DNA of 56,086 nucleotides, counting the filler, from Sluysia triapertura (taxonomy: Eukaryota): assembly GCA_046118255.1 (NCBI GenBank). It is 4 parts of 4 records of this genome, joined end to end, with 100 filler letters (N's around TTAATTAATTAA, not from the genome) between each part and the next. Parts side by side here need not be neighbours in the genome. Positions count along the whole stretch, not along the records: positions 1 to 11,870 come from JBJNIA010162152.1; 3 more parts are not named here. One strand, 5' to 3'. Under the pieces are notes generated by a model. It was not told where the DNA came from, did no database searches, and worked only from the letters and a program-made list of their open reading frames with translations. The position numbers and the translations under genes are program-made. The stretch's first letter is position 1. Every line of letters begins with the position of its first letter. Below are positions 1 through 11,870 of this stretch, piece by piece.

Positions 1-2295
1 AAATTACTTCCGGTAAATTGTTGTAATGAAAAGCTATTCAGTACCAGCTAAATATGTAGTATTAAATGAGTCGTAAAGATAATAATATACGTAGAATAAA
101 AAAGTAAAACCGAAAGAAGATCGAATAAAAATGATTGTTGGATATTATTGGTGTTGAAAGAGATTTTCATTTAATAAAACAAACAATATTTTTCTTTAAT
201 TTTTCTAGCTTTTAACCCCTTCAGTACGATTATATTTTGCAATATTGCACTCACAGGATACAAAAAGTCCATTGTAAAACTAACGATCACTACTATCGAT
301 TTCACTCAATTATTCTTTTTCATCATGGACACATTGGTGCGGGAAAATCGAGAAAAGTTGATGTTGTACCCATAACGACTGATTTCGAAATATGTAAAAA
401 TCCCAATGAAAATAAACATAGTACGGATAATCCATAATTCTAAGTACGGAATATATATGATACAAACAAATCTAAAATATCCTATTATACTGTACATAAC
501 TGATATAGCCAAGCCCTAACATGAATAAACAACGCACACTCAACATATACACAGCAGCAGTAAGCGTTATTCGTCTATTAAAACAAGTAAATTCATCAGA
601 ACACTTATTAATGCTATTCGGCTGTTGCGGAAGTTACCTAAAAACGCTTAATTATGTGACATTTATGTAATATGAAGTATGCATTTAAACAAAATAACTG
701 TCGCTTCCCCCGAAGCATTTATTTTAATCTGAAGAATATTAAACAAACATTCAATTAATTGCTCTCTCATTCTGTCGAACTGCAGACAACTTTGGAAAGA
801 ACAAATTTGTTGTTTATATTTGTGTATGGTGCGATTGCTTGCTGTGATGTGATCGACTTATCAATAACATACAGTTCATAAGTATCGAAAAAATTGAAAG
901 CATTGGCTAACAAGTCACATGTTTAAAACGAATTGGTTAATTTATAATTTTAGTAAAACGTTTAAAAATATTTGTAGCACTTAAAATAAACTTTTGAAAA
1001 TGACAAGCAATTATTGGTGCATTCCCTTATCGAATTCGTTCATAAAGTTATTTATTCAGTCATAAACATTAGACCTATATACTCGTAAACCTAATTCATT
1101 GATCTATATACTGACTGATCTATGTACTGTCCCAAAAAATCGAATATCGTCAACCAAACACGTCTTTCTGAAGATCGTTGTTGTAAAACTACGGCAAATC
1201 ATCATTTAATAAAAAGAGAATATTTTATTTCTGACGTTCTATTAGCAAAACAGAAAGATCATACGAAATGAACAAATGAATGAATTTCTTTAAGGACTAT
1301 TAACAACTCTTTGACTGTGCCGTGTAGCGTACGTGATTGGCAAACGTATCGGCAACAAGCACACTAAAAACACTCACATAATCAAAATGTAAACGCAGTT
1401 CAAATTTTCTTGATATTTAGTAATAATAATTTCTGAAGAATATGTTTAAAAACAATTATTTTCACTAGGCTTAAAAAAGTCATTAATAATTGTTCATAAC
1501 TAACTCTTTTCGGGATTGTTTAACTTTGTATCCATGCCAACATTATAATTATCACAGCTTAGTATTACTGAGACTTTCTGAATATAGAATAATATTATTA
1601 AAAATATGTAATATTATATATAATTATACAATAAATAACAGAAATATTCTATTTTTCAATGTCATTATTTATTATTAAGTGTTTTATTGTTATTTAAATT
1701 CATTAAAAATTTTTCTTCTCCTTCATTTGATTTTTTATTTGTAGAGATTTCTTTTCTCGACTTAATTGTTTCTCGATAATGACAATTAGTTCTATTATAC
1801 TGCTTTGGTATTTTCGATTTCTTCTATCTATAATTTCCTTAACGGCATTTTCGATTCATGTGTTACAAAGAATTAGTATTTTTATTTAAAGTCGCTATTT
1901 TATTATTTTATGATATTTCATTATCCTAATGGATCTATATTTAACATTTTTAAATAACTCAAGTGAAACTGAAATGATAAATTATTTAATAAGAAATAAT
2001 TTAATTCTAGAACGAATGTAATCTTCGTCACATCTTGTTAGAACTTTTCTTTATTCCTTTCACATTGAATGGTGCGCTACTCTGCGCTCCCAAATTTATT
2101 TCAATTATTTATGAAATTTTCGAGAACTCCAGCTGTGCGCAAGTAATTGGAGCATTCTCTGGAGGAGCTCCTCTGCCCGACAACAAGGAGTGAGTGAGTG
2201 TAGGAACACTTCTTTGTTTCCAGATCAGCAAGTGGACCTGCTTCGCAGATCGCTCTCAGTTCCACAGTGACTCTCAAACCGTAGTGGTGTTACTA

Positions 2296-2796
2296 TTTCG
2301 TGTGTCACGATGGATCCAGTCGCGGAAGGATCCGAAGATCTCGTTCCAGGAACGTTTCAATGAACAAAACTGGGCAGATGGACCTGCAAAAAAACTCAAA
2401 GATCAACAACAGCAACTACACGTTATCAAAATTTTGGAACTCCGCGACTACACGATGAACCCAGTTGCGGAGGGATTCGAAAATGGCACAAACCCTACAG
2501 CATGGATCAATACCAATTATTTTCAAATCACAAAACTCCGCGTGTAATCGATGAGCCCAGTCGCGAAGGGGCTCGAAGAATCAACCAAAACCTAATGCAG
2601 AAGTCTGCAAATAAGAAGGAACTACAATTACAGAACTATCAACATAACAGCAAGAAAAGGCAGAAGAAAGTTAAATGGAAGAAGACCATCCCGACTGATG
2701 AAAATAATACTCCGCATGTTATGCCCAGTAGCGGAGGAGCAGGAAGACTTCCCAAGAATACTCCGCTTAGTGAGCCCAGTAGCGGAAGGGCTCGAA
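2296..2796. repeat. Five dispersed copies of a 36-42 nt structured motif (two overlapping stems)
   Basis: Copies at 2296-2336, 2440-2481, 2536-2577, 2710-2745 and 2761-2796. Consensus CTCCGC-n(5-11)-GAGCCC-AGT-NGCGGAR-GGGCTC-GAA, with compensatory changes. Confidence 0.8.
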
Positions 2797-3292
2797 AACT
2801 ACAACAGAAAATCACAACACCCTACTCACTGCCAAAACTTGCACCTGCTCGGCAGCAGCACACAGCACTGAAACCCCAAGCTGAAGAAAAAGAGGATAGT
2901 ATTTGTTCAAAACCGAAAACCCCTCTTTTAAATTTCTTAAATATTTCAATTAAGATTGAGGGTTACTGCTGCGTATTTTTCATTTAAACATCTTCTTCAA
3001 ATCTTTACTTCCCATACTTACTTCTGACCGAATCGTTATTGACTTAAGAAACTTCCTGCATTTTAATACATTTCTTATTTCTTCCTCTCATAATTTCCGA
3101 ACCCCATTCCCTCCATCATTTTGCAAATACATTCACAATATACTCGTTACACTTTTTGCTGATTTAAGTTGCGCTAAAACATCAGAAAACTATGTCCAAA
3201 TTTCTTCTATTTATCTAAGCCGTATCAATAATGAACTACAATCTTTATATGGTAACGATCCCATATCCTATCTCAGTGTTAAAGAACCGAAG

Positions 3293-5466
3293 TTGGTTAC
3301 ACTTACCAAAACATCTTTAAAAACCCCCTTGGAACCTCTTACATCAACAGCCTCGCTGCCTTCCAAGAAAGATATCCTCCCTGTAAGAAAACTTAACCGT
3401 TCCCTCAGGAATAAGCCCCCATTTCGCGAAGAAACTTTTGATAGGATGCCTAATCAGTTATGCAATGATGCAATTAAAATCACCGAAAAGTTTGATAAAT
3501 TTAATTTATTACGTAATGATGCAGTTAAAATAAATGAGAATAAATTATATAATGCTGAAATTAAAGTTAAAATTGATGAATTGCATAATGATAAAACTGA
3601 AACTAAAGAGAATAAATTATATAATGATGAAATTAAAGATAAAATTAATGAGCTGCATAGTGATGAGGTTAGGGTTAATGAGAATAAATTATCTACTTAT
3701 GAAATTAAAATTAATGAGGATAAATTATATAATGATAAAATCAAAATTAAAATTAAGGATAGTGAATTACGTGATGATGAAACTAAAATTAAAATTAATG
3801 ATATATTTTCTAATGTTAATGATATTGTATATAAAAATGAATTTTCTCATGATGTGCTTGCTAAACTATCTTGCATTATTCTCGATTCCGAATCCTCTTC
3901 TAAGTCTGATTTGCTTGCAAATAATGGAAGTATAACTCCTGAAACTGAAACTTCTCACTCTGTTAATGATGACTTCTTAGATGGTCTTCACTTTCTTCCA
4001 ATTACGATGGATTCCAGAATTTTTAACCTGAAACTAAAACAAAAGCCCAAATTTCGCTTTGCTTATTCACCCAATGATGTCAGCAATTATACTTATCTTT
4101 TCACAATGGATGATATCATTGATACCATTGGATGAAACATTGCAGCTGCATCAACCAAGTTATTCTTTATCTTCAACCTTCATAAACATTGGTTCTTGGT
4201 TGTTGCTGATAATATTACTGCACTCGCAGAATTCTTTGATCCCCTCCAATGATCTTGATGCTGCTCGACTTTCCAAAGTGCAGAAAGTTCTCTAGAAACT
4301 CAGAATTCTCCCTTTCTTATAATCATCCCCATTACTTCGTTATTCCTTCCCGGCCCCTTACATTACAAACAAATTCTTATGATTGCGGTCTATTAGTTTG
4401 CAGATATATTCTTCGCCTGTTTCAACAAAAACATTGCACCAGATTGAGTGCTTCTTCTATTCGATCTCATCTTAAATCCGTTCGATTTGAACAAAAAGCT
4501 CGCTGGTGCTGGTGCAGTTTCATCTGCATTATCTTATCACTTTTATTTCAATCATTCAAATTTCAATCATTCACAAAGGATGAAAAGGATAACCTTACCC
4601 AGGCTTTCTACCAACTAACTGGGTTATCTCATTTCTATCGCTGGTAATCCTTGAAGTGTCAATCCCTGCTCACCTCATCACTTGCACAATCTCGCCTCAC
4701 AAATAGACTGCTGTTGAATACTGAACTTCCTGACAATACTTTCTTTTTTCTACTTGAAGCACGAACTAATACTCTTGCACTTAACTTTTCTGCGAATAAC
4801 TTGAAATTGAACATTCTCACGAATTGTCGAAGATGTACATTCAAGTGTGAATCTGCTCCACTTAATCATTGTTCTTTTAAATCTAGCCTTATCACTATGC
4901 GTCACAATCTCGCACTCAAACTTGTCACAAACTTTCTTCAATATAATGGTATTGATGTAGATTGTGATGTTCAGTGCACTCTTTTTTCAAATCGCTATGA
5001 TGTTCCTCATGAAATTAAACGGCAACGTCCTGACTTACTCTTTAAATTTGACAAATGTTACTACTTAATTCATGTAAAAACCCCATTCGACAAAAATGAT
5101 TCTTACTCTAATATTCACAAAACAAATTTTTTAAAATATTCATCTTTTTCTCTGCATCTAAGTAAGATTGTTCGTTGTATAGTTAAAATTTTCACCCTAA
5201 TATTTCCCATACTTGGCACAATGAACCCCGAAAATGTAACTATTCTTAAAAACTTCAAATGTGCTATTAACAAACTGTTGGTAGATATCTCTAAGGATAT
5301 GGTGAAGATGTCATATCGCATCTACGTTAATCACATACTTTCTCGGTACCCAAAACTTCGCCGCAGTGCTGCTGCCCTGACTCCAATTCCAACAACAGCT
5401 ACAATCAATCAACCTATCCCAGTGTCAGTCCCTGCCCCAGCACCAGATACTGTTACTGATCATTGA
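3293..5466 (+). mobile_element. Degenerate non-LTR retrotransposon of RLE type with Ulp1 protease (NeSL-like), reverse transcriptase deleted
   Basis: Ulp1/C48 triad across stops and frameshifts: FNLHKHWFLVVAD...EFFDP (His codon 4187-4189) and LQTNSYDCGLLVC (~4360-4400). The 4651-5466 ORF has ARTNTL, CRRC...HC zinc knuckle, RHN, RPDL, VK.PFD and KY motifs of restriction-like endonucleases. No RT core lies between them, only a KLAGAG thumb-like remnant near 4495. Confidence 0.85.
3455..3830 (+). repeat. 36-bp (12-codon) tandem minisatellite with 72-bp higher-order unit inside the retroelement ORF
   Basis: Units like AATAAATTATATAATGATGAAATTAAA start at 3539, 3611 and 3683. They translate as ENKLYNDEIKxK repeats. 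Confidence 0.85.
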
Positions 5467-7430
5467 TGTAATATCTCATTCTAAATATTTACTTGATCCC
5501 TTCATACTCTAACAAAAAAAATCTTGTATGAAAATCATTATGTTTATAAGAAGATTTTCAATTTATAGTTAATATATTTTCGTATTATTATTATTATTAT
5601 TGCTGGTGTTTTTATATGTTTATCTTACACTTAACAGCAAATTACCTAAGGGATCGGTCCACCTAATAGATACGCCTTATACCAATATTAGAGACGTATT
5701 ATTAGGATTTTGATTAAAATTTATCTTAATTTGGTTTACTGGCAAATAAGCTCGATCTGATTTAAGTTTAAGATTTTATTAATTTGCACAACCCTTTTAT
5801 TAAGGTGTTACGTTATTTTGCATATTTTATTAAGGTGCTGTTACAAAATGAGATTTTAATTAGTGGCTTATTGCGTTGCACAGCTCTTTAAATCAACTAG
5901 TATTTTAGAATCTTAATATCTTAGGGTCAAAATAACTAATAAAACCAAATTTGACACTTTATTTTACTTATGACACTAAAAGATGTTATACAATACCAAT
6001 AACAAAACAAAAAACTATAATAACAATAGTATCTAAGATAACTCAATGCTTGATTGGTTATTAACAGGATTTTAATTCAAAAGTTTCCTAACCCTATTTA
6101 AGGTGTTGGTACGAAAAATACATAATGATTTTACGTATGAGTTTGGTATTCCCACTTAGGGTGAATACTTTTACAACCTACAAATAAAAAATTACTTGAT
6201 AATTTTCGAAGGCATCATAACATTAAAACTTGATTTTAGTTCCAAAATTCTTGTGATGAATTGTTGAGTGTTAATCTATTTATACTTACCTATTTTCTTT
6301 GTTTTCTAATTTTAACAATTTTTCTTTATTTCTTTATAATATTTAAAATAAATTACTTAATTTATAGGAAAACTTAATTTAAACAACTTAATTTAAAGAA
6401 CTTACTTTTATGTTCTTTATTCTAACCTTTATCGTACGCTATTTATATTGATTTGTATTACCTGCCGGACGGAATTAATTTGCAAAAGGTGTGATAAGGT
6501 GCAAATATTTACTTAAAATAACATAGCTCACGTACTATTTACACTAGATTTATGAAACAAAAACGAAATTAAAGAGAATGGAATTTTCTATATTCCTATA
6601 ATTCGGCAAACAACGAGTACAAACAGTGGTTAATATATTAACCATTCGTACGATAAAGGTTAAACGTGATGTTCCACTTCTGTTTTAACAGCCATGTGCT
6701 CCAGTGAATGAAATTCTAAGTTCACTGGGAATCGATTAAATAAAATAACTAATATGACTGAATCGCTGCATGGTTAAACGTACCATAATGTTCGACAATA
6801 GATACATAATAATAATAATATTAAGTAAAGCTTTAGGTATTTTAATTTCAATGATAAGATGCGCAGTACTTACGTAATCATCTGAGCATTATGAAAGTCC
6901 ATATAAAACGAAACGCTAACATACAGTTAAATGAACTTGCAGAATAACAGAAATTCAATTTGACATAGGTAAACTTCAACAACTTGTAAATCAATGCCAC
7001 TTCGAAAAAATCTTTACGATAATTTAAAATTGCTGTATATTAAGTTGCATCACTTTTAACATGATTCAACTTAATACAGGCAAACTAATTTGTACTATTT
7101 AGTTACCCATTATTTTAAAAAACTGGATAAAATTTGAATTAAAATTATATTTGATTATATTTATCAGATTTAAAACTTTTTTAATTTTAAACTTATTTTT
7201 TATTTATTTCTTGAAAGATTTTTAGTTTTAACAAAATTGTGTTAGATTTTAATTATTTATTTTTGACTTTGTACATGACTTGAATATAAAAATAAGTTTT
7301 AAGGTTTCTTTAATTCATTTTTTGTAGCAATATTTTAAATGGATTCTTAAAATCTATTTAAAACTATTTAAAGAGTTTAAAATAACTCTAAGCATCAAAC
7401 AATTTTACATACATTGTGAAAAAAAACCTT

Positions 7431-7513
7431 GACTATTATTAGACTTCATAAAATGGACTAAACCCGGGACCTGTCGCTGCGCGGTTCGATGCTCTACCAC
7501 TGAGCTATCAGCC
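7431..7513 (-). mobile_element. tRNA-derived SINE-like copy (A-box half, internal deletion)
   Basis: Minus strand reads GGCTGATAGCTCAGTGGTAGAGCATCGAAC (tRNA 5' half with A box), followed by the tail AGTCCATTTTATGAAGTCTAA shared with 18508-18580. Confidence 0.7.
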
Positions 7514-8129
7514 AAACTTATGGATAAATCAATTTTTCGGTGTTGACTGTTCGAGAATTGAATTTCGAATTATTGTTGATACTGATGTGTTACTCCTCTA
7601 ATCGGAGGAGCGGGGATCACATAGTTGTTACGATACAAGGTTGTAAATCTGATGACCAAAAAACATTAATGGATTTGCTGGCGATGATGATGCTGTTGAT
7701 GATTTGATAATTTCACAAAATGGCTGCAAATTGTTGAGCTAAACGATGAAACCAATATGGCGACAATGATTTTTATGGATTCTGATTAATGGCGTCTTTG
7801 TTAATCAATGTCTTTATATACGGATAAAGACATATTTTTGATTTTGGTTCATTTAAATAAACTTCTTTCTAGAAGTTTCTTTTATGCCATTTTTTAATTT
7901 ATAATAATAATAATTTTAATTTTAATATAATTAAATTAATAATATTTTACAATACATAAATTTTAATATTTTTTATATTTTTTTGTAATTTAAAAATCGT
8001 AAAAATACAAAATACAAAACAAAAATTATGAACACCTTTACAGAAAGAAAAGAATCCAGAAATGAAGTTGAAATGTTTATAGAGTGATTTGTTTGAGAAT
8101 GAGAGCCTTAACATTTTCCATTAGAGAAA

Positions 8130-8400
8130 TGAGAATTAAAAGCGGAAAATTAAAAGCAAAATTAAATTCATTGTTTTTATATATGTTAAAAATATTGGTG
8201 ATTGTTATTTTAATGTGAGAAGTAATTTAAATAAAAATAGATTGAATAGAGTAAAAGAAAGTAATGGTTGATCATTAATCAAATTTTTGTGTTTTGTACA
8301 TAATAAAGACAATACCATGTAATAGTCAGAGTTGTTATTATAGATCTAATTTTCAAAGAGGTTTTGATTGTAAAACTCAGGATTAATTGGATGATGAAAG
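8130..8400 (+). repeat. Dispersed repeat, copy 1 of 3 (core GATTGTTATTTTAATGTGAGAA)
   Basis: Colinear with 25380-25540 (+) and 26750-27039 (-). Confidence 0.8.
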
Positions 8401-8719
8401 AGTCTAAAAGGAAAAACTTAAATTTACTTTATTATATAATTTTATTATTTTAATTATTAATAATTAAAATAATTTTGAGGTAATTTTACATTTAATTATT
8501 TTTATTATTATTGAAAATAAACTCAAGAAATAACTAATCTATTTTATTAGAAAAATCATTTAGTGAATGATCCATAATTCTTTTATATATTCAAAAATTA
8601 ATTTAATGTTCGAAAATTATTAATGGCAAAGTTTTAAATAATATTCATAAGAATATTTTAAAGATTATTTATCTATTTATTATTCTAGTTTCAATTTTTA
8701 GAAGGCAGTTGATTTAATT

Positions 8720-8900
8720 CTGTGTTTCATCATCCCTGGTTTTCATTTCATTTATATTAGCTTTTATTTTATTTTATTTTTCTTGACATTCATATTAGGA
8801 GCACCATCTGCAGCACAAGATGTTATATTTTCATTCGTATATCATTGTCATCTAAGTAGTTTTTTTAGCTTATTAAATATATCTTTGGAAATAGTTATGC
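8720..8900 (-). mobile_element. hAT transposase remnant
   Basis: Minus strand reads DIFNKLK...ITSCAADGAPNM, matching the second catalytic Asp region (xTDGAxxM) of Charlie/ZBED-type hAT transposases. Frameshifted. Confidence 0.6.
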
Positions 8901-9629
8901 TTCTAAAATTAAAATAAATAAATATACTTACCAATCATATCTATATAATAAATTTGTATATTTATAAAAACAACGAGCTTCTACTGCAGTTTTGACGGAC
9001 ACTTATTTCAGATTAACACCACAAAATGATGTGAAACAATACAGGTGTTGCAATAGGCCAATTATGTGCGAACAACTACGTTGTTTAGCAAATTTCTTGA
9101 CTTGCCGAGTTTCTACCCCTAACGGCAGACTTCACACTTCGCGGTGAACCCTGGAACCAAGTTTATTCGGCGATGCCAATCACCCGGTTGATATTTTGGT
9201 CTCGTCAAACGAAATTATATCTGATAATTATTTAAGAATTTGTTTTTTTGTTAAATTTGTCACCGATATCTATCATTGCATTTAAATGGCCCGGAGCGAA
9301 AGGGTTAAGGTTGTGTCGAGTCCATTTTCAAAGTGCCCCCACCCTGCAGGACGCCAGCGTTCTCCCTGTGGAGAAACACTTATATAGAATATTGTCAATA
9401 TAAACATAGTAAAAATAGATTATTTTGTTTAACATACTAATAGATTTATATGCAAAAATCAATAACTATTATTATACAACAATATTTTTAAATATTTAAC
9501 ATTTTATTTTACAAAAAATAGATCAAATAGAATATTATTGTATTATTAATAAAATTATTATATGAAATAAAATTATGAATTAAATTATTTAAATTATAAA
9601 ATAATATAAATTAGATTATTGTTTAAAAT

Positions 9630-10625
9630 CTTAGTTCAAGGTTATCTAAATAACTATATAAAGCCATAGACACTATCAAATTTCTCCTATACTTTTAAAT
9701 ATTATCTTTGCTTAAAAGAATTTTAATTTGACGCGATTAGCTCATTTGGATTTTAATTCAACTTATAAATATTGTTCGGATCTCCATTCATCAGTTTATT
9801 CGGACACTACTTAATCATTAATTTACTCGTTAGTTTTTTATTATGAGACTAGCCTATTTTAATAGGTCGTAAAATTATACGTAAATTATTAAATTTTTTA
9901 TTTACCACTCCTTTTAAATTTGGTGACGAAAAAAATTCATTTATTAGAATATATTTACTAATATTATATAATTATTACTATCTGTCATTTTCATCTGTAT
10001 TTAATATATTTCTTCAGCATAACATTTTATATTTTAATTGTGAATATAACGTAAGGTACACCGTTTTTACAGGAACGCAAATTTGTTAAAGAAAGTTGAT
10101 TTAATATACAATAGAAATATCTGACGTAAATTACCTTTTATTAAACGTTGACTAATTATTGTTATAGCATTACAAAGAAAATATTATATTGATATTACCA
10201 TAAAAATAGTTATATAATTAATCATTTAAGATAATTACTAACTTCCATTACTATTTCTTTTGCTTGCTACTTACAACTTAAGTGTGTAAGACTAAGATTG
10301 TATGGGACTCACGTGCATTATATTTCTTAAAATAACACATTCACAAACAGAGAATCTTGCAGTATTAATATAATAATATTTTATTATTTATTTCATTTAA
10401 TTATACAAAAATCAAATAAAATCATTTTAAATATGTAATATTATTCGTATAAAAATTTAAAACAGTAAGAAACAACAAAAATCTAACTTTATCAGACATT
10501 TTAATGCAAAATCCGAGCCCTGTTAATTTCCATTGGTTGTGTGTATTAATTACAACATTAGTAGGACAGAGATTTCCATGGATTACTCCGTGAGTTATAT
10601 GTAAATGTCTTAAAGCTTCAACTAA
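9630..10625 (-). pseudogene. SCYL2: SCY1-like pseudokinase 2 (SCYL2) fragment; one clean exon 10625-10488, downstream exon degraded
   Basis: An AG/GT-bounded 138-nt exon encodes LVEALRHLHITHGVIHGNLCPTNVVINTHNQWKLTGLGFCIK (SCYL2-type HGN.P.N...WK.G.F). 9800-9630 gives a frameshifted PNEL..QIKILLS...SYLDNLELR. Confidence 0.7.
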
Positions 10626-11659
10626 CTAAAATAACAACATAATAATTGTTGATATTAATTATATTATTATTTTATTATTTTTCAAATGTTTTCGTAACAA
10701 TTAAAATATAAAATATAAAATGTGAAACAATTTTATTTTAATAATGTAAATCACTTTTGGCAATAAAAACTATTTTGAATAAATTTTAAATATAAAAAAT
10801 ATTAAATATTAAAAAGATAAATATTAAAAAATAGAAATTTATTATTTTATGATGCTCCAAAATTTCTCCATTTTTGTAAAATGCATTATTAAAACTTTAA
10901 TTGTAAATTGGTGAAAAATAAAATTAATAATTAATTAATTGATAATTGATAATTAATGTATTTTTAAAATTTTATTTAAAAAATATTTTTAATAATTGAT
11001 AATCCATATTGATATTACTTGCTAACATAGAAATATATTTGTACATATATTAAAGAATAATAGTTATGATTTGTTTTAGCGGGTAAAAGTAAACAAGATG
11101 AAATTTCAAAGAAATTTTGCCAAGGAATTTGAATAACACACTTACATATACATTTTGAAGTAATGTGTATTTATTTCAATTAAAATGAATTGAAATTTCG
11201 TAATAATTTTGAACAAATTTTCTTTTTATCATAACTTTCTATTTTATCAAATAATTTTATATTCTTTATCACACGAATTATTCAAAAGTCTTATTCAATC
11301 TGTAATCTTAACGTACCTAGATGACTAGCTTCATAGTAACGTAATAATTTGTGATTTGTTCGTAAATCCATAACTACAGATTATGAATGTGTCTGAGTGT
11401 AATAACTACATGGAAACATTAAACAGAAAAATGGAAACACCAATAAAGTGATATATTAACATTCTGTGTTACTTACTACTCATTCTGATGAAGAATACTA
11501 TTAGAATTGAGAGTTTCTTTTTAAATTATAATTAATAATAATAATAATAATATATTAATTTATATTGCGCTTATACCTACTGCAAACTAACTACTCATAA
11601 ACGCTTAGAATAAATCATTAGCAAAAATAATATTTCTGAAACAGAAATAACTTTGCTTT

Positions 11660-11860
11660 TTTCTTAAATATTTCCTAATCTTCCAGTACTTTGACGTACT
11701 CTGGTAACTCGTATATTTTTGAGACATCACTGTGGATTCTGTATAGATTATTATTGTCTCAATGATTTCCAATTTTCTTATTATTTCTAAAATATATTCA
11801 GGACTTCCGTAATGTAAGCATTTGTAAATTATTGTCATAATTTTAAATTCTATTCTTGCT
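11660..11860 (-). pseudogene. Possible second SCYL2-like fragment
   Basis: YDNNL..CLHYGSPEYILE and ELPEYVKVL resemble SCYL2 kinase subdomain VIII and later sequence. Frameshifted. Confidence 0.35.
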
Positions 11861-11870
11861 TTTATTGGCA

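What the first reader, a model, noticed from the sequence alone, without database searches (positions are those of the whole stretch)
2296..2796. Five-copy covarying pseudoknot-like motif upstream of a NeSL-like retroelement
Seen: five irregularly spaced copies separated by unrelated A-rich spacers, each with two interleaved stems. Stem A is GGATCC/GGATCC, GAACCC/GGATTC, GAGCCC/GGGCTC (twice) and TGCCC/GAGCA, closing an invariant 10-nt loop AGTNGCGRAR. Three stem-A positions change in compensatory fashion. Stem B pairs the loop (NGCGGAR) with an upstream CTCCGCN, and its inner pair swaps G-C (copies 1, 3) for T-A (copy 5). The C-A mismatches in copies 2-5 become G-U wobbles on the minus strand (e.g. 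UUC GAGCCC UUCCGCU ACU GGGCUC ACUA AGCGGAG), suggesting a minus-strand RNA H-type pseudoknot. Known: R2/RTE-type elements carry HDV-like, twister or hammerhead ribozymes at their 5' ends. This motif lacks the HDV P3/L3, the twister L4 and the hammerhead CUGANGA core. Inference: a possibly undescribed tandem structured RNA (nuclease-resistant, protein-binding or self-cleaving) linked to a retroelement or to a divergent transcript.
Basis: partly seen in the sequence, partly recalled or inferred. Interest (0 to 1): 0.8.

Follow-up and report, generated by a model that had tools for sequence, protein, structure and literature searches.

The report
Coding repeat that also forms hairpin
The five-copy motif is real, but it lies inside the protein-coding 5' end of a NeSL/Utopia-like retrotransposon: each copy encodes a short conserved peptide and also keeps a base-paired hairpin through compensatory changes, whereas the proposed second stem (the pseudoknot) and the minus-strand reading are not supported.

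Summary
Confirmed: five ~45-nt units in the window, at 2293-2339, 2437-2484, 2533-2580, 2707-2748 and 2758-2799. The same unit occurs at least 150 times in this genome, always in one retroelement family, and matches no Rfam family.

Corrected:
- The units are not upstream of the element. The element starts near 2020, and the units lie in its N-terminal reading frame.
Of 114 inter-unit spacings, 79 are multiples of three, and 84 intervals are stop-free in this frame against 36 and 12 in the other two.

Supported: stem A (6 bp closing a 10-nt loop) is maintained at the nucleic-acid level. All six pairs show changes on both sides. The synonymous third base of the Ala/Val codon tracks its partner (GAG..GCT, GGG..GCC, TTG..GCA, GAA..GTT, GGA..GTC).

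Not supported:
- Stem B is invariant, so it shows no covariation. Four of its six pairs follow from Thr-Pro versus Gly-Gly codons. Its 3' arm abuts stem A with a zero-length connector.
- The window's C-A mismatches are decay of a dead, RT-deleted copy. Wobble asymmetry at synonymous sites favours the sense strand.

Most likely this is a dual-use coding repeat whose sense-RNA hairpins act in cis, as the R2 5' ORF RNA element does. The function is inferred, not shown.

The parts
2020..5522 (+). One internally deleted (RT-less) copy of a non-LTR retroelement that carries the motif. The 5' end is approximate; the 3' end is at an A-run.
   Evidence: Homology to many other copies starts at about 2017-2024. 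The stop is at 5464-5466, followed by an A-run at about 5513-5522. An intact-like sibling, L049, has Peptidase_C48 and RVT_1.
2293..2339 (+). Unit 1. The upstream arm is decayed (TTTCGTG). The hairpin is at 2312-2333 (GGATCC / AGTCGCGGAA / GGATCC).
   Evidence: CM hit of 45.1 bits.
2437..2484 (+). Unit 2. Upstream arm CTCCGCG. The hairpin is at 2457-2478 (GAACCC / AGTTGCGGAG / GGATTC, with one C.A from decay).
   Evidence: CM hit of 59.8 bits.
2533..2580 (+). Unit 3. Upstream arm CTCCGCG at 2536-2542. The hairpin is at 2553-2574 (GAGCCC / AGTCGCGAAG / GGGCTC).
   Evidence: CM hit of 70.1 bits.
2707..2748 (+). Unit 4 (short-linker type). Upstream arm CTCCGCA. The hairpin is at 2721-2742 (ATGCCC / AGTAGCGGAG / GAGCAG). 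In most copies it is TTTTGCCC/GGGCAGGA, 8 bp with two sense-strand G.U pairs.
   Evidence: CM hit of 47.2 bits.
2758..2799 (+). Unit 5 (short-linker type). Upstream arm CTCCGCT. The hairpin is at 2772-2793 (GAGCCC / AGTAGCGGAA / GGGCTC).
   Evidence: CM hit of 56.4 bits.
2364..2984 (+). Stop-free stretch of 207 codons in the 'TPR' frame that reads units 2-5 as ..TPRLHDEPSCGGIRK.., ..TPRVIDEPSREGARR.., ..TPHVMPSSGGAGR.., ..TPLSEPSSGRARK... It is a remnant of the element's N-terminal coding region.
   Evidence: The same frame is open through the units in many copies.
2960..4132 (+). Continuation of the element's ORF in a shifted frame: a Cys-rich N-terminal segment (..CS..GYCCVFF..) followed by an internal coding tandem repeat at 3514-3803.
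   Evidence: alignment with other copies.
4240..4566 (+). Remnant of the Ulp1-like (Peptidase_C48) protease domain. It ends at a deletion junction near 4567 that removed the RT.
   Evidence: Weak Pfam C48 hit. All other genomic matches to 4450-4850 start at about 4567.
4648..5463 (+). C-terminal CCHC plus restriction-like endonuclease (PD..D/E-x-K) domain of the element.
   Evidence: Aligns to residues 890-1089 (after the RT) of P0001, a 1151-aa RVT_1+C48 protein, E 2e-17, with CRRC..H..C, RH[ND] and RPD..YLI.VK.P.D conserved.

Best explanation
The motif is a dual-use module, repeated 3-8 times per element, in the 5'-terminal coding region of a Ulp1-protease/RT/restriction-like-endonuclease non-LTR retrotransposon of the NeSL/Utopia kind. 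Each unit encodes a conserved basic peptide, (N)TP[RHL]V..[EGL]PS[RS]GG[AVI]R[KR]. On the same sense strand each unit also keeps a 6-bp hairpin (stem A) closing a nearly invariant 10-nt loop, AGUNGCGGAG. Shown: the coding frame, the stem-A covariation (including at synonymous sites), and the near-invariance of synonymous bases in the loop and in the upstream CUCCGC. Inferred: the hairpins work in the element's sense RNA as cis-acting recognition sites, most plausibly bound by the element's own protein for RNP assembly or 5'-end handling during target-primed reverse transcription. That is what has been described for the RNA element inside the 5' part of the R2 ORF. The upstream CUCCGC and the loop GCGGAG are more likely sequence-specific contact sites, or an alternative or inter-unit pairing, than the second stem of a compact within-unit pseudoknot.
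For: Family and position:
- The unit is found in at least 66 related 5' regions and gives at least 152 CM hits, all in one element family.
- The element starts at about 2020.
- Sibling copy L049 has open frames with Peptidase_C48 (1.8e-6) and RVT_1 (7.6e-30) downstream of the units.

Coding:
- 79 of 114 inter-unit spacings are multiples of 3 (p = 9e-15).
- Stops between units number 49 in the TPR frame, 159 in the PVAEG frame and 280 in the third frame.
- Stop-free intervals number 84, 36 and 12 respectively.
- L054 reads all five units in one frame, open from the element's 5' end. L039 has a 693-codon open frame with eight 23-aa units.

Pairing:
- On 99 instances all 6 stem-A pairs change on both sides. 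There are 118 doubly changed cells against 41.9 +/- 7.8 in shuffles (0/500), and slid controls drop from 92% to 40-56% paired.
- 17 of 18 recurrent arm haplotypes keep at least 5 canonical pairs: mean 5.61 against 4.64 when shuffled (0/5000).
- The synonymous third base of the Ala/Val/Ile codon (T 65, C 55, A 18) is the complement of base 2 of the partner codon: GAG..GCT, GGG/CGG..GCC, TTG..GCA, GAA..GTT, GGA..GTC. Pro-Ala/Val switches to Ser-Ile/Thr together: CCC..G[CT]N versus TCC..A[TC]C.

Nucleotide-level constraint:
- Synonymous third positions are nearly invariant: ACT 136/140, CCG 128, AGT 139, GGA 126, GGG 131, CGA 135.
- Synonymous differences between subfamily representatives are 13.5% in motif codons against 29.0% elsewhere.

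Sense strand:
- Among synonymous non-CpG transitions, those giving a sense-strand G.U are common (C27>T 24, A37>G 8). Those giving a sense-strand C.A are rare (G41>A 4, T5>C 1).
- Unit 4 extends to 8 bp only if two sense-strand G.U pairs are allowed.

Precedent: the R2Bm protein-binding 5' RNA lies in the 5' half of the ORF and may contain a pseudoknot (PMC2346776).
Against: - There is no experimental or expression evidence. No RNA run holds this sequence, so transcription, strand and folding in vivo are untested.
- The 521-nt repeat region shows no global thermodynamic signal on either strand (z = +0.45 sense, -0.59 antisense).
- Stem A (-7.1 kcal/mol) and stem B (-8.4 kcal/mol) are nearly iso-energetic and compete in minimum-free-energy predictions.
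- Many counted instances share ancestry, so the number of independent compensatory events is far smaller than the number of cells.
- The wobble asymmetry is partly confounded by coding constraint.
- There is no cross-species support. The N-terminal protein has no detectable relatives. The nearest RT relative (31% identity) shows no motif in the part of its contig that is available.
- Protein binding is pure analogy.
Confidence: 0.5

Rival explanations
1. DNA-level element. The units are repeated 'monomers' of an internal promoter or enhancer at the 5' end of the element, as in other non-LTR elements. The invariant ACTCCGC and GCGGAGGG would be factor-binding sites in inverted orientation. Alternatively, stem A forms in single-stranded DNA, either in the first-strand cDNA or as a cruciform.
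For: - The units sit in the first ~700 nt of the element, where internal promoters of non-LTR elements lie (established knowledge).
- They belong to larger, variable-number ~70-145-nt repeats.
- The loop and the upstream arm are invariant even at synonymous sites, which suits sequence-specific recognition better than a plain helix does.
- G.T is also the most tolerated mismatch in DNA, so the wobble data identify a strand, not a molecule.
Against: - A factor with fixed specificity would not accept at least 7 different arm sequences that change only in compensatory fashion. That pattern calls for base pairing.
- A double-stranded binding site would show no strand asymmetry between G.T and A.C.
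- The 13- versus 19-nt spacing of the two invariant blocks does not keep helical phase.
Confidence: 0.17
2. Purely a protein repeat. Only the peptide (TP..PS[RS]GG.R[KR]) is selected, for example as basic/RGG-like nucleic-acid-binding repeats, as proline-directed phosphorylation sites, or as Gly-Gly sites for the element's own Ulp1-like protease. On this view the complementarity is a by-product of Pro (CCN) and Gly (GGN) codons.
For: - The frame is open, spacings are multiples of three, and the peptide is conserved across subfamilies that differ by 30-40% in nucleotides.
- Four of the six stem-B pairs and three of the six stem-A pairs are dictated by Thr/Pro/Gly/Ala/Arg first and second codon positions (read directly from the sequence).
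- The protease domain keeps the catalytic His, Asp, Gln and Cys when aligned to yeast Ulp1, 1euv.
Against: - It cannot explain why synonymous third positions covary with the partner codon (GCT/GCC/GCA, GTT/GTC), or why Pro-to-Ser and Ala/Val-to-Thr/Ile change together.
- It cannot explain why four-fold degenerate sites (ACT, CCG, GGA, GGG, CGA) are nearly invariant in an AT-rich genome.
- It cannot explain the halved synonymous divergence in motif codons.
Confidence: 0.12
3. One reading: a minus-strand RNA H-type pseudoknot (stems A and B together), repeated in tandem upstream of the element, acting as a nuclease-resistant, protein-binding or self-cleaving RNA.
For: - Both arm sets are complementary in nearly all copies: stem B cells are 92% paired.
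- On the minus strand the zero-length connector is loop 1. That is less prohibitive than a zero-length loop 3 on the plus strand (geometric reasoning from classical H-type pseudoknots).
- No known Rfam family matches.
Against: - The units are inside the sense-strand ORF, not upstream.
- Stem B shows no change on both sides beyond isolated cells. Its only variable pair is not maintained: G-C 58, A.A 31, T-A 25, T.C 5.
- The window's C-A mismatches are copy-specific decay.
- The wobble asymmetry and the unit-4 extension favour the sense strand.
- Units 4 and 5 have only a 4-nt linker (34 of 99 instances), too short for the full 12-13-bp within-unit pseudoknot.
- No ribozyme family scores even at E <= 10.
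Confidence: 0.07

Closest known systems
R2 retrotransposon 5' RNA element (protein-binding RNA within the 5' half of the R2Bm ORF; PMC2346776)
   Same: A structured RNA signal inside the coding 5' region of a single-ORF, restriction-like-endonuclease non-LTR retrotransposon, with a possible pseudoknot. Coding and RNA-structure constraints overlap.
   Different: The R2 element is a single ~320-nt multi-helix domain, not a 45-nt unit repeated 3-8 times. There is no sequence or model similarity (nothing in Rfam). Protein binding is demonstrated for R2 and only inferred here.
[quoted passage not shown]
   Same: The host element has the same domain set: an N-terminal Cys-rich region, a Ulp1-like C48 protease, an RT, and a C-terminal CCHC plus RLE.
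   Different: No spliced-leader or U2 snRNA target was seen at the junctions. The RT phylogeny was not done. A repeated 5' coding hairpin module is not mentioned in the passages of that paper returned by a term search.
Monomeric tandem repeats at the 5' ends of LINEs (for example the mouse L1 5' UTR monomers; own knowledge)
   Same: Variable-number tandem units at the element's 5' end, kept in register across subfamilies.
   Different: Those monomers are non-coding promoters. Here the units are translated in frame and carry a covarying hairpin.
HDV-like, hammerhead and twister ribozymes at the 5' ends of R2/RTE-type elements
   Same: A structured RNA associated with the 5' end of a non-LTR retroelement.
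   Different: No match to any ribozyme model at E <= 10. The units are internal to the ORF and repeated, and they lack P3/L3/P4-type elements.

Membership tests
H-type RNA pseudoknot (within one unit) | Helix 1 (stem A) supported by base pairing and covariation | tested here: met
   All 6 pairs change on both sides; 0/500 shuffles reach the observed covariation. Synonymous-site compensation is present.
H-type RNA pseudoknot (within one unit) | Helix 2 (stem B) supported by covariation | tested here: not met
   Six pairs are invariant. The seventh is G-C 58, A.A 31, T-A 25, T.C 5. Four of the six pairs are forced by Thr-Pro versus Gly-Gly codons.
H-type RNA pseudoknot (within one unit) | Connecting loops long enough to cross the grooves of coaxially stacked helices | tested here: not met
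   The 3' arm of stem B abuts the 3' arm of stem A (0 nt; alignment A1). The linker is only 4 nt in 34 of 99 units. This is geometric reasoning, not a 3D model.
Known Rfam families (ribozymes, xrRNA, frameshift elements and others) | Score at or near the family's gathering threshold | tested here: not met
   Best scores are 12-18 bits against thresholds of 40-70, E 2.5-9.6. Nothing reaches gathering score in the whole window.
Protein-coding tandem repeat | Open frame through the repeats in many copies; spacings in multiples of three | tested here: met
   84 of 114 intervals are stop-free in the TPR frame, against 36 and 12. 79 of 114 spacings are multiples of 3, p = 9e-15. Open frames of 210-995 codons are seen.
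   That frame carries 159 stops against 49, and a conserved TAA in unit 3.
NeSL/Utopia-type non-LTR retrotransposon (host element) | C-terminal CCHC zinc knuckle plus restriction-like endonuclease | tested here: met
   Window 4651-5466 aligns to the post-RT C-terminus of P0001 (E 2e-17), with the CCHC, RH[ND] and PD..(D/E)xK motifs conserved.
NeSL/Utopia-type non-LTR retrotransposon (host element) | Reverse transcriptase and Ulp1-like C48 protease in one ORF | tested here: met
   Met in sibling copy L049: RVT_1 7.6e-30 and C48 1.8e-6 / 1.3e-4, with the catalytic H/D/Q/C present. The window's own copy has lost the RT.
NeSL/Utopia-type non-LTR retrotransposon (host element) | Insertion into spliced-leader (NeSL) or U2 snRNA (Utopia) genes | tested here: inconclusive
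   No Rfam family was found in the flanks of nine copies. Five copies share a ~45-nt 5' flank of unknown nature.
NeSL/Utopia-type non-LTR retrotransposon (host element) | RT-domain phylogenetic placement in the clade | not tested
R2-type 5' protein-binding RNA element | Specific binding by the element-encoded protein | not testable with these tools
   Requires EMSA or filter binding with recombinant protein.

The most novel reading that the evidence does not exclude
The units form a previously undescribed multivalent RNA module. Each sense-strand hairpin presents GCGGAG directly 5' of its 3' arm. That position is the ideal geometry for a classical H-type pseudoknot with a CUCCGC lying downstream, that is, in the next unit (units 4 and 5 keep an exact 51-nt spacing), or on another transcript. 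An array of 3-8 units could then build a chain of inter-unit pseudoknots or an intermolecular kissing network. Such a network could scaffold the retroelement RNP, stall ribosomes or exonucleases, or dimerise the RNA, all while the same bases encode a conserved peptide.
Probability: 0.15. Interest if true: 0.7.

Novelty: new variant of a known kind. Interest (0 to 1): 0.45.

Why it matters
This looks like a clean natural case of one short sequence under two simultaneous constraints. A conserved peptide repeat and a covarying RNA hairpin share the same bases, and amino-acid changes (Pro-Ala/Val to Ser-Ile/Thr) appear to be driven by base pairing. The module sits at the 5' end of a poorly studied retroelement lineage that carries a protease, an RT and a restriction-like endonuclease. 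For R2, the only well-studied relative, an RNA signal inside the 5' ORF governs the protein's role in integration. A short, repeated, easily synthesised module would make that kind of RNA-protein recognition directly testable in a second lineage. The case is also a caution for motif scans: apparent 'pseudoknot' complementarity can come largely from Pro/Gly codon complementarity.

Tried and rejected
- Rfam, with permissive E-value on 1800-5800, gathering on the whole window, and E <= 0.01 on the flanks of nine copies: nothing. No tRNAs either.
- Global folding of the 521-nt repeat region on both strands: no signal above shuffles.
- Cross-species test: the N-terminal 322-aa protein has no relatives in the large protein collection or the ESM Atlas. 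The nearest RT relative, P0001 (31% identity), was fetched as L083, but its contig is cut at the 5' side and shows no motif.
- RNA-seq: no RNA run holds the sequence, only two DNA-type holders kept as contigs.
- Protease-site idea (an invariant Gly-Gly as a cleavage site for the Ulp1-like domain): complex prediction of the protease domain with units 4-5 gave 'no answer' (score 0.00). This is evidence neither for nor against.
- A PDB sequence search with the endonuclease ORF found nothing useful. The domain was assigned through P0001 instead.
- Test for an amplified non-autonomous deletion derivative: the RT-deletion junction near 4567 is unique to this copy among the 40 best matches, so it gives no argument for cis-sufficiency of the two ends.

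Full report
**1. Observation**

Their cores, CCAGTNGCGRARG, start at 2316, 2461, 2557, 2725 and 2776. Each has a 6-nt inverted repeat (stem A) around a 10-nt loop, AGTNGCGRAR. Each also has an upstream CTCCGCN, 10 nt before the hairpin in units 1-3 and 4 nt before it in units 4-5.

The motif is not a chance feature. A DNA search of the window's own genome (619 Mb in 264k contigs) finds at least 66 related 5' regions. A regex scan of the fetched loci gives 175 distinct instances. A covariance model built from 99 of them (A1, R1) returns at least 152 genomic hits, capped at 150 scored. It scores the five window units at 45-70 bits. Rfam has nothing comparable.

**2. Where it lies**

Homology among copies begins at about window 2020, about 275 nt before unit 1. 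It runs to an A-run near 5522. The window copy carries three recognisable parts:
- a Cys-rich N-terminal segment;
- a remnant of a Ulp1-like protease;
- a C-terminal CCHC/restriction-like-endonuclease domain. This domain aligns with the post-RT end of a 1151-aa RVT_1+C48 protein, P0001, at E 2e-17.

The window copy lacks the RT. The deletion junction, near 4567, is private to this copy.

A better-preserved sibling, L049, has long open frames with Peptidase_C48 and RVT_1 downstream of the same units. Its protease keeps the catalytic His, Asp, Gln and Cys when aligned with yeast Ulp1. The host is therefore a NeSL/Utopia-like element (PMC4640811), and the motif is inside it, not upstream of it.

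**3. The units are translated**

In L049 the frame reading ACT CCG CGT ... CCC AGT CGC GGA GGG (TPRVHDEPSRGGVRK) stays open for 375 codons through units 2-5. In L054 and L005 it is open from the element's 5' end through all five units. In L039 a 693-codon open frame holds eight 23-residue units, NNTPHVRPSSGGARR.

The 114 distinct inter-unit intervals of 300 nt or less were scored in all three frames:

|---|---|---|---|
| Stops between units | 49 | 159 | 280 |
| Stop-free intervals (of 114) | 84 | 36 | 12 |

In addition, 79 of the 114 spacings are multiples of three (p = 9e-15). The PVAEG frame also has a conserved TAA just before unit 3. A protein alignment of seven copies shows the unit peptides conserved, while the spacers vary and carry in-frame indels.

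**4. Stem A is still selected as a helix**

- On A1, all six pairs show changes on both sides. There are 118 doubly changed cells against 41.9 +/- 7.8 in shuffles (0/500). Paired cells fall from 92% to 40-56% when the partner is slid.
- Of 18 arm haplotypes seen at least twice, 17 keep five or six canonical pairs. The mean is 5.61 against 4.64 when arms are permuted (0/5000).
- Several compensations involve synonymous sites. The third base of the Ala/Val codon in the 3' arm complements base 2 of the first codon of the 5' arm: GAG..GCT, GGG or CGG..GCC, TTG..GCA, GAA..GTT, GGA..GTC. An Arg CGA-to-AGA switch accompanies G-to-T at the outer pair.
- Pro-Ala/Val changes to Ser-Ile/Thr together: CCC..G[CT]N against TCC..A[TC]C.
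- Peptide selection alone cannot produce these patterns.

Synonymous positions elsewhere in the unit are almost invariant: ACT 136/140, CCG 128, AGT 139, GGA 126, GGG 131, CGA 135. This holds even though the window's flanking DNA is only about 17-31% G+C. Synonymous differences between subfamily representatives are 13.5% in motif codons and 29.0% elsewhere. These pairs are not independent, so that comparison is only indicative.

**5. Stem B and the pseudoknot**

CTCCGC and GCGGAG are complementary in 92% of cells but essentially never vary, so there is no covariation. The one variable pair is not maintained: G-C 58, A.A 31, T-A 25, T.C 5.

In the reading frame the arms are [A]CT CCG C.. (Thr-Pro) and .GC GGA G.. 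(Ser/Arg-Gly-Gly). Four of the six pairs follow from the amino acids, because Pro and Gly codons are complementary. Only two pairs join free synonymous sites, so the complementarity by itself carries little weight.

The geometry is also unfavourable:
- The 3' arm of stem B abuts the 3' arm of stem A (0 nt).
- One third of the units have only a 4-nt linker.
- A full within-unit H-type fold is therefore strained on either strand.
- On the sense strand the loop GCGGAG is placed as in a classical pseudoknot only if its partner lies downstream, for example in the next unit. Units 4 and 5 keep a 51-nt spacing. This reading cannot be tested by covariation.

Energetically the two stems are near-equal competitors, at -7.1 and -8.4 kcal/mol. 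The array as a whole folds no better than shuffles.

**6. Strand**

Most copies have perfect arms.

Among synonymous, non-CpG transitions, the two directions differ:
- Changes that create a sense-strand G.U are frequent: C27 to T 24 times, A37 to G 8 times.
- Changes that create a sense-strand C.A, which would be an antisense G.U, are rare: G41 to A 4 times, T5 to C once.

Unit 4 forms 8 bp (TTTTGCCC/GGGCAGGA) only with two sense-strand G.U pairs. This favours the coding strand. Shared ancestry and residual coding effects weaken the test, and no RNA data exist.

**7. Mechanism**

Shown:
- a translated peptide repeat;
- a nucleic-acid-level hairpin, with a sequence-invariant loop and upstream block, on the same bases;
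- restriction to one retroelement family;
- 3-8 units per copy.

Inferred, with a probability of about one half: the hairpins act in the sense RNA as cis signals bound by the element's own protein. This is by analogy with the R2Bm 5' RNA element, which lies in the 5' half of the ORF and may include a pseudoknot (PMC2346776).

Rivals:
- a DNA-level promoter or cDNA hairpin (about 0.17);
- a pure peptide repeat (about 0.12), including the idea that the invariant Gly-Gly is a site for the Ulp1-like protease, which was left untested by an uninformative complex prediction;

**8. Novelty**

The general kind, a cis-acting RNA structure overlapping the 5' coding region of an RLE-type retrotransposon, is already known from R2. 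I therefore rate this a new variant of a known kind, of moderate interest.

Noticed in passing
window 3514-3803: A second, unrelated coding tandem repeat inside the same element (periods 36 and 72 nt, 6.6 and 2.5 copies). It reads ..NDEIKxKINELHND.. in the open frame 2960-4132.
   Followed up: no
window ~4567: Internal deletion junction that removed the whole RT between the protease remnant and the endonuclease domain. All 39 other best genomic matches to 4450-4850 begin at about 4567, so the deletion is private to this copy. The 3' part has copies up to 95% identical, which suggests recent activity of the family.
   Followed up: partly
L005, L007, L027, L031, L036 (5' junctions): Five copies share about 45 nt immediately upstream of the element start (..ATCAATGAAAAACGA.GTTTG.TGCTGAATTGGTTGCAAAA). 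This is either a longer 5' end or a preferred repeated target. No Rfam family was found in these loci.
   Followed up: partly
L049:1398-3140 and L049:3144-5432: Two separate Peptidase_C48 matches, at residues 367-456 of the first frame and 47-177 of the next. They may be two tandem Ulp1-like domains, or one domain plus a degenerate duplicate.
   Followed up: no
L039 (G000:C252838), minus strand 157-2235: A subfamily with eight units at an exact 69-nt period inside a 693-codon open frame. The antisense frame over the array is also open for 156 codons, probably a side effect of the Pro/Gly-rich composition.
   Followed up: no
window 2228-2241 and 2374-2387: GCAAGTGGACCTGC and GCAGATGGACCTGC lie 146 nt apart, so units 1 and 2 belong to a larger ~145-nt ancestral duplication. 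Some copies (for example L003) lack the 2171-2288 segment.
   Followed up: no
window 5600-11870 and 1-2000: AT-rich flanks (G+C 17-35%) with many short low-complexity repeats. There are no tRNA or Rfam hits and no long ORFs. The host organism was not identified.
   Followed up: partly
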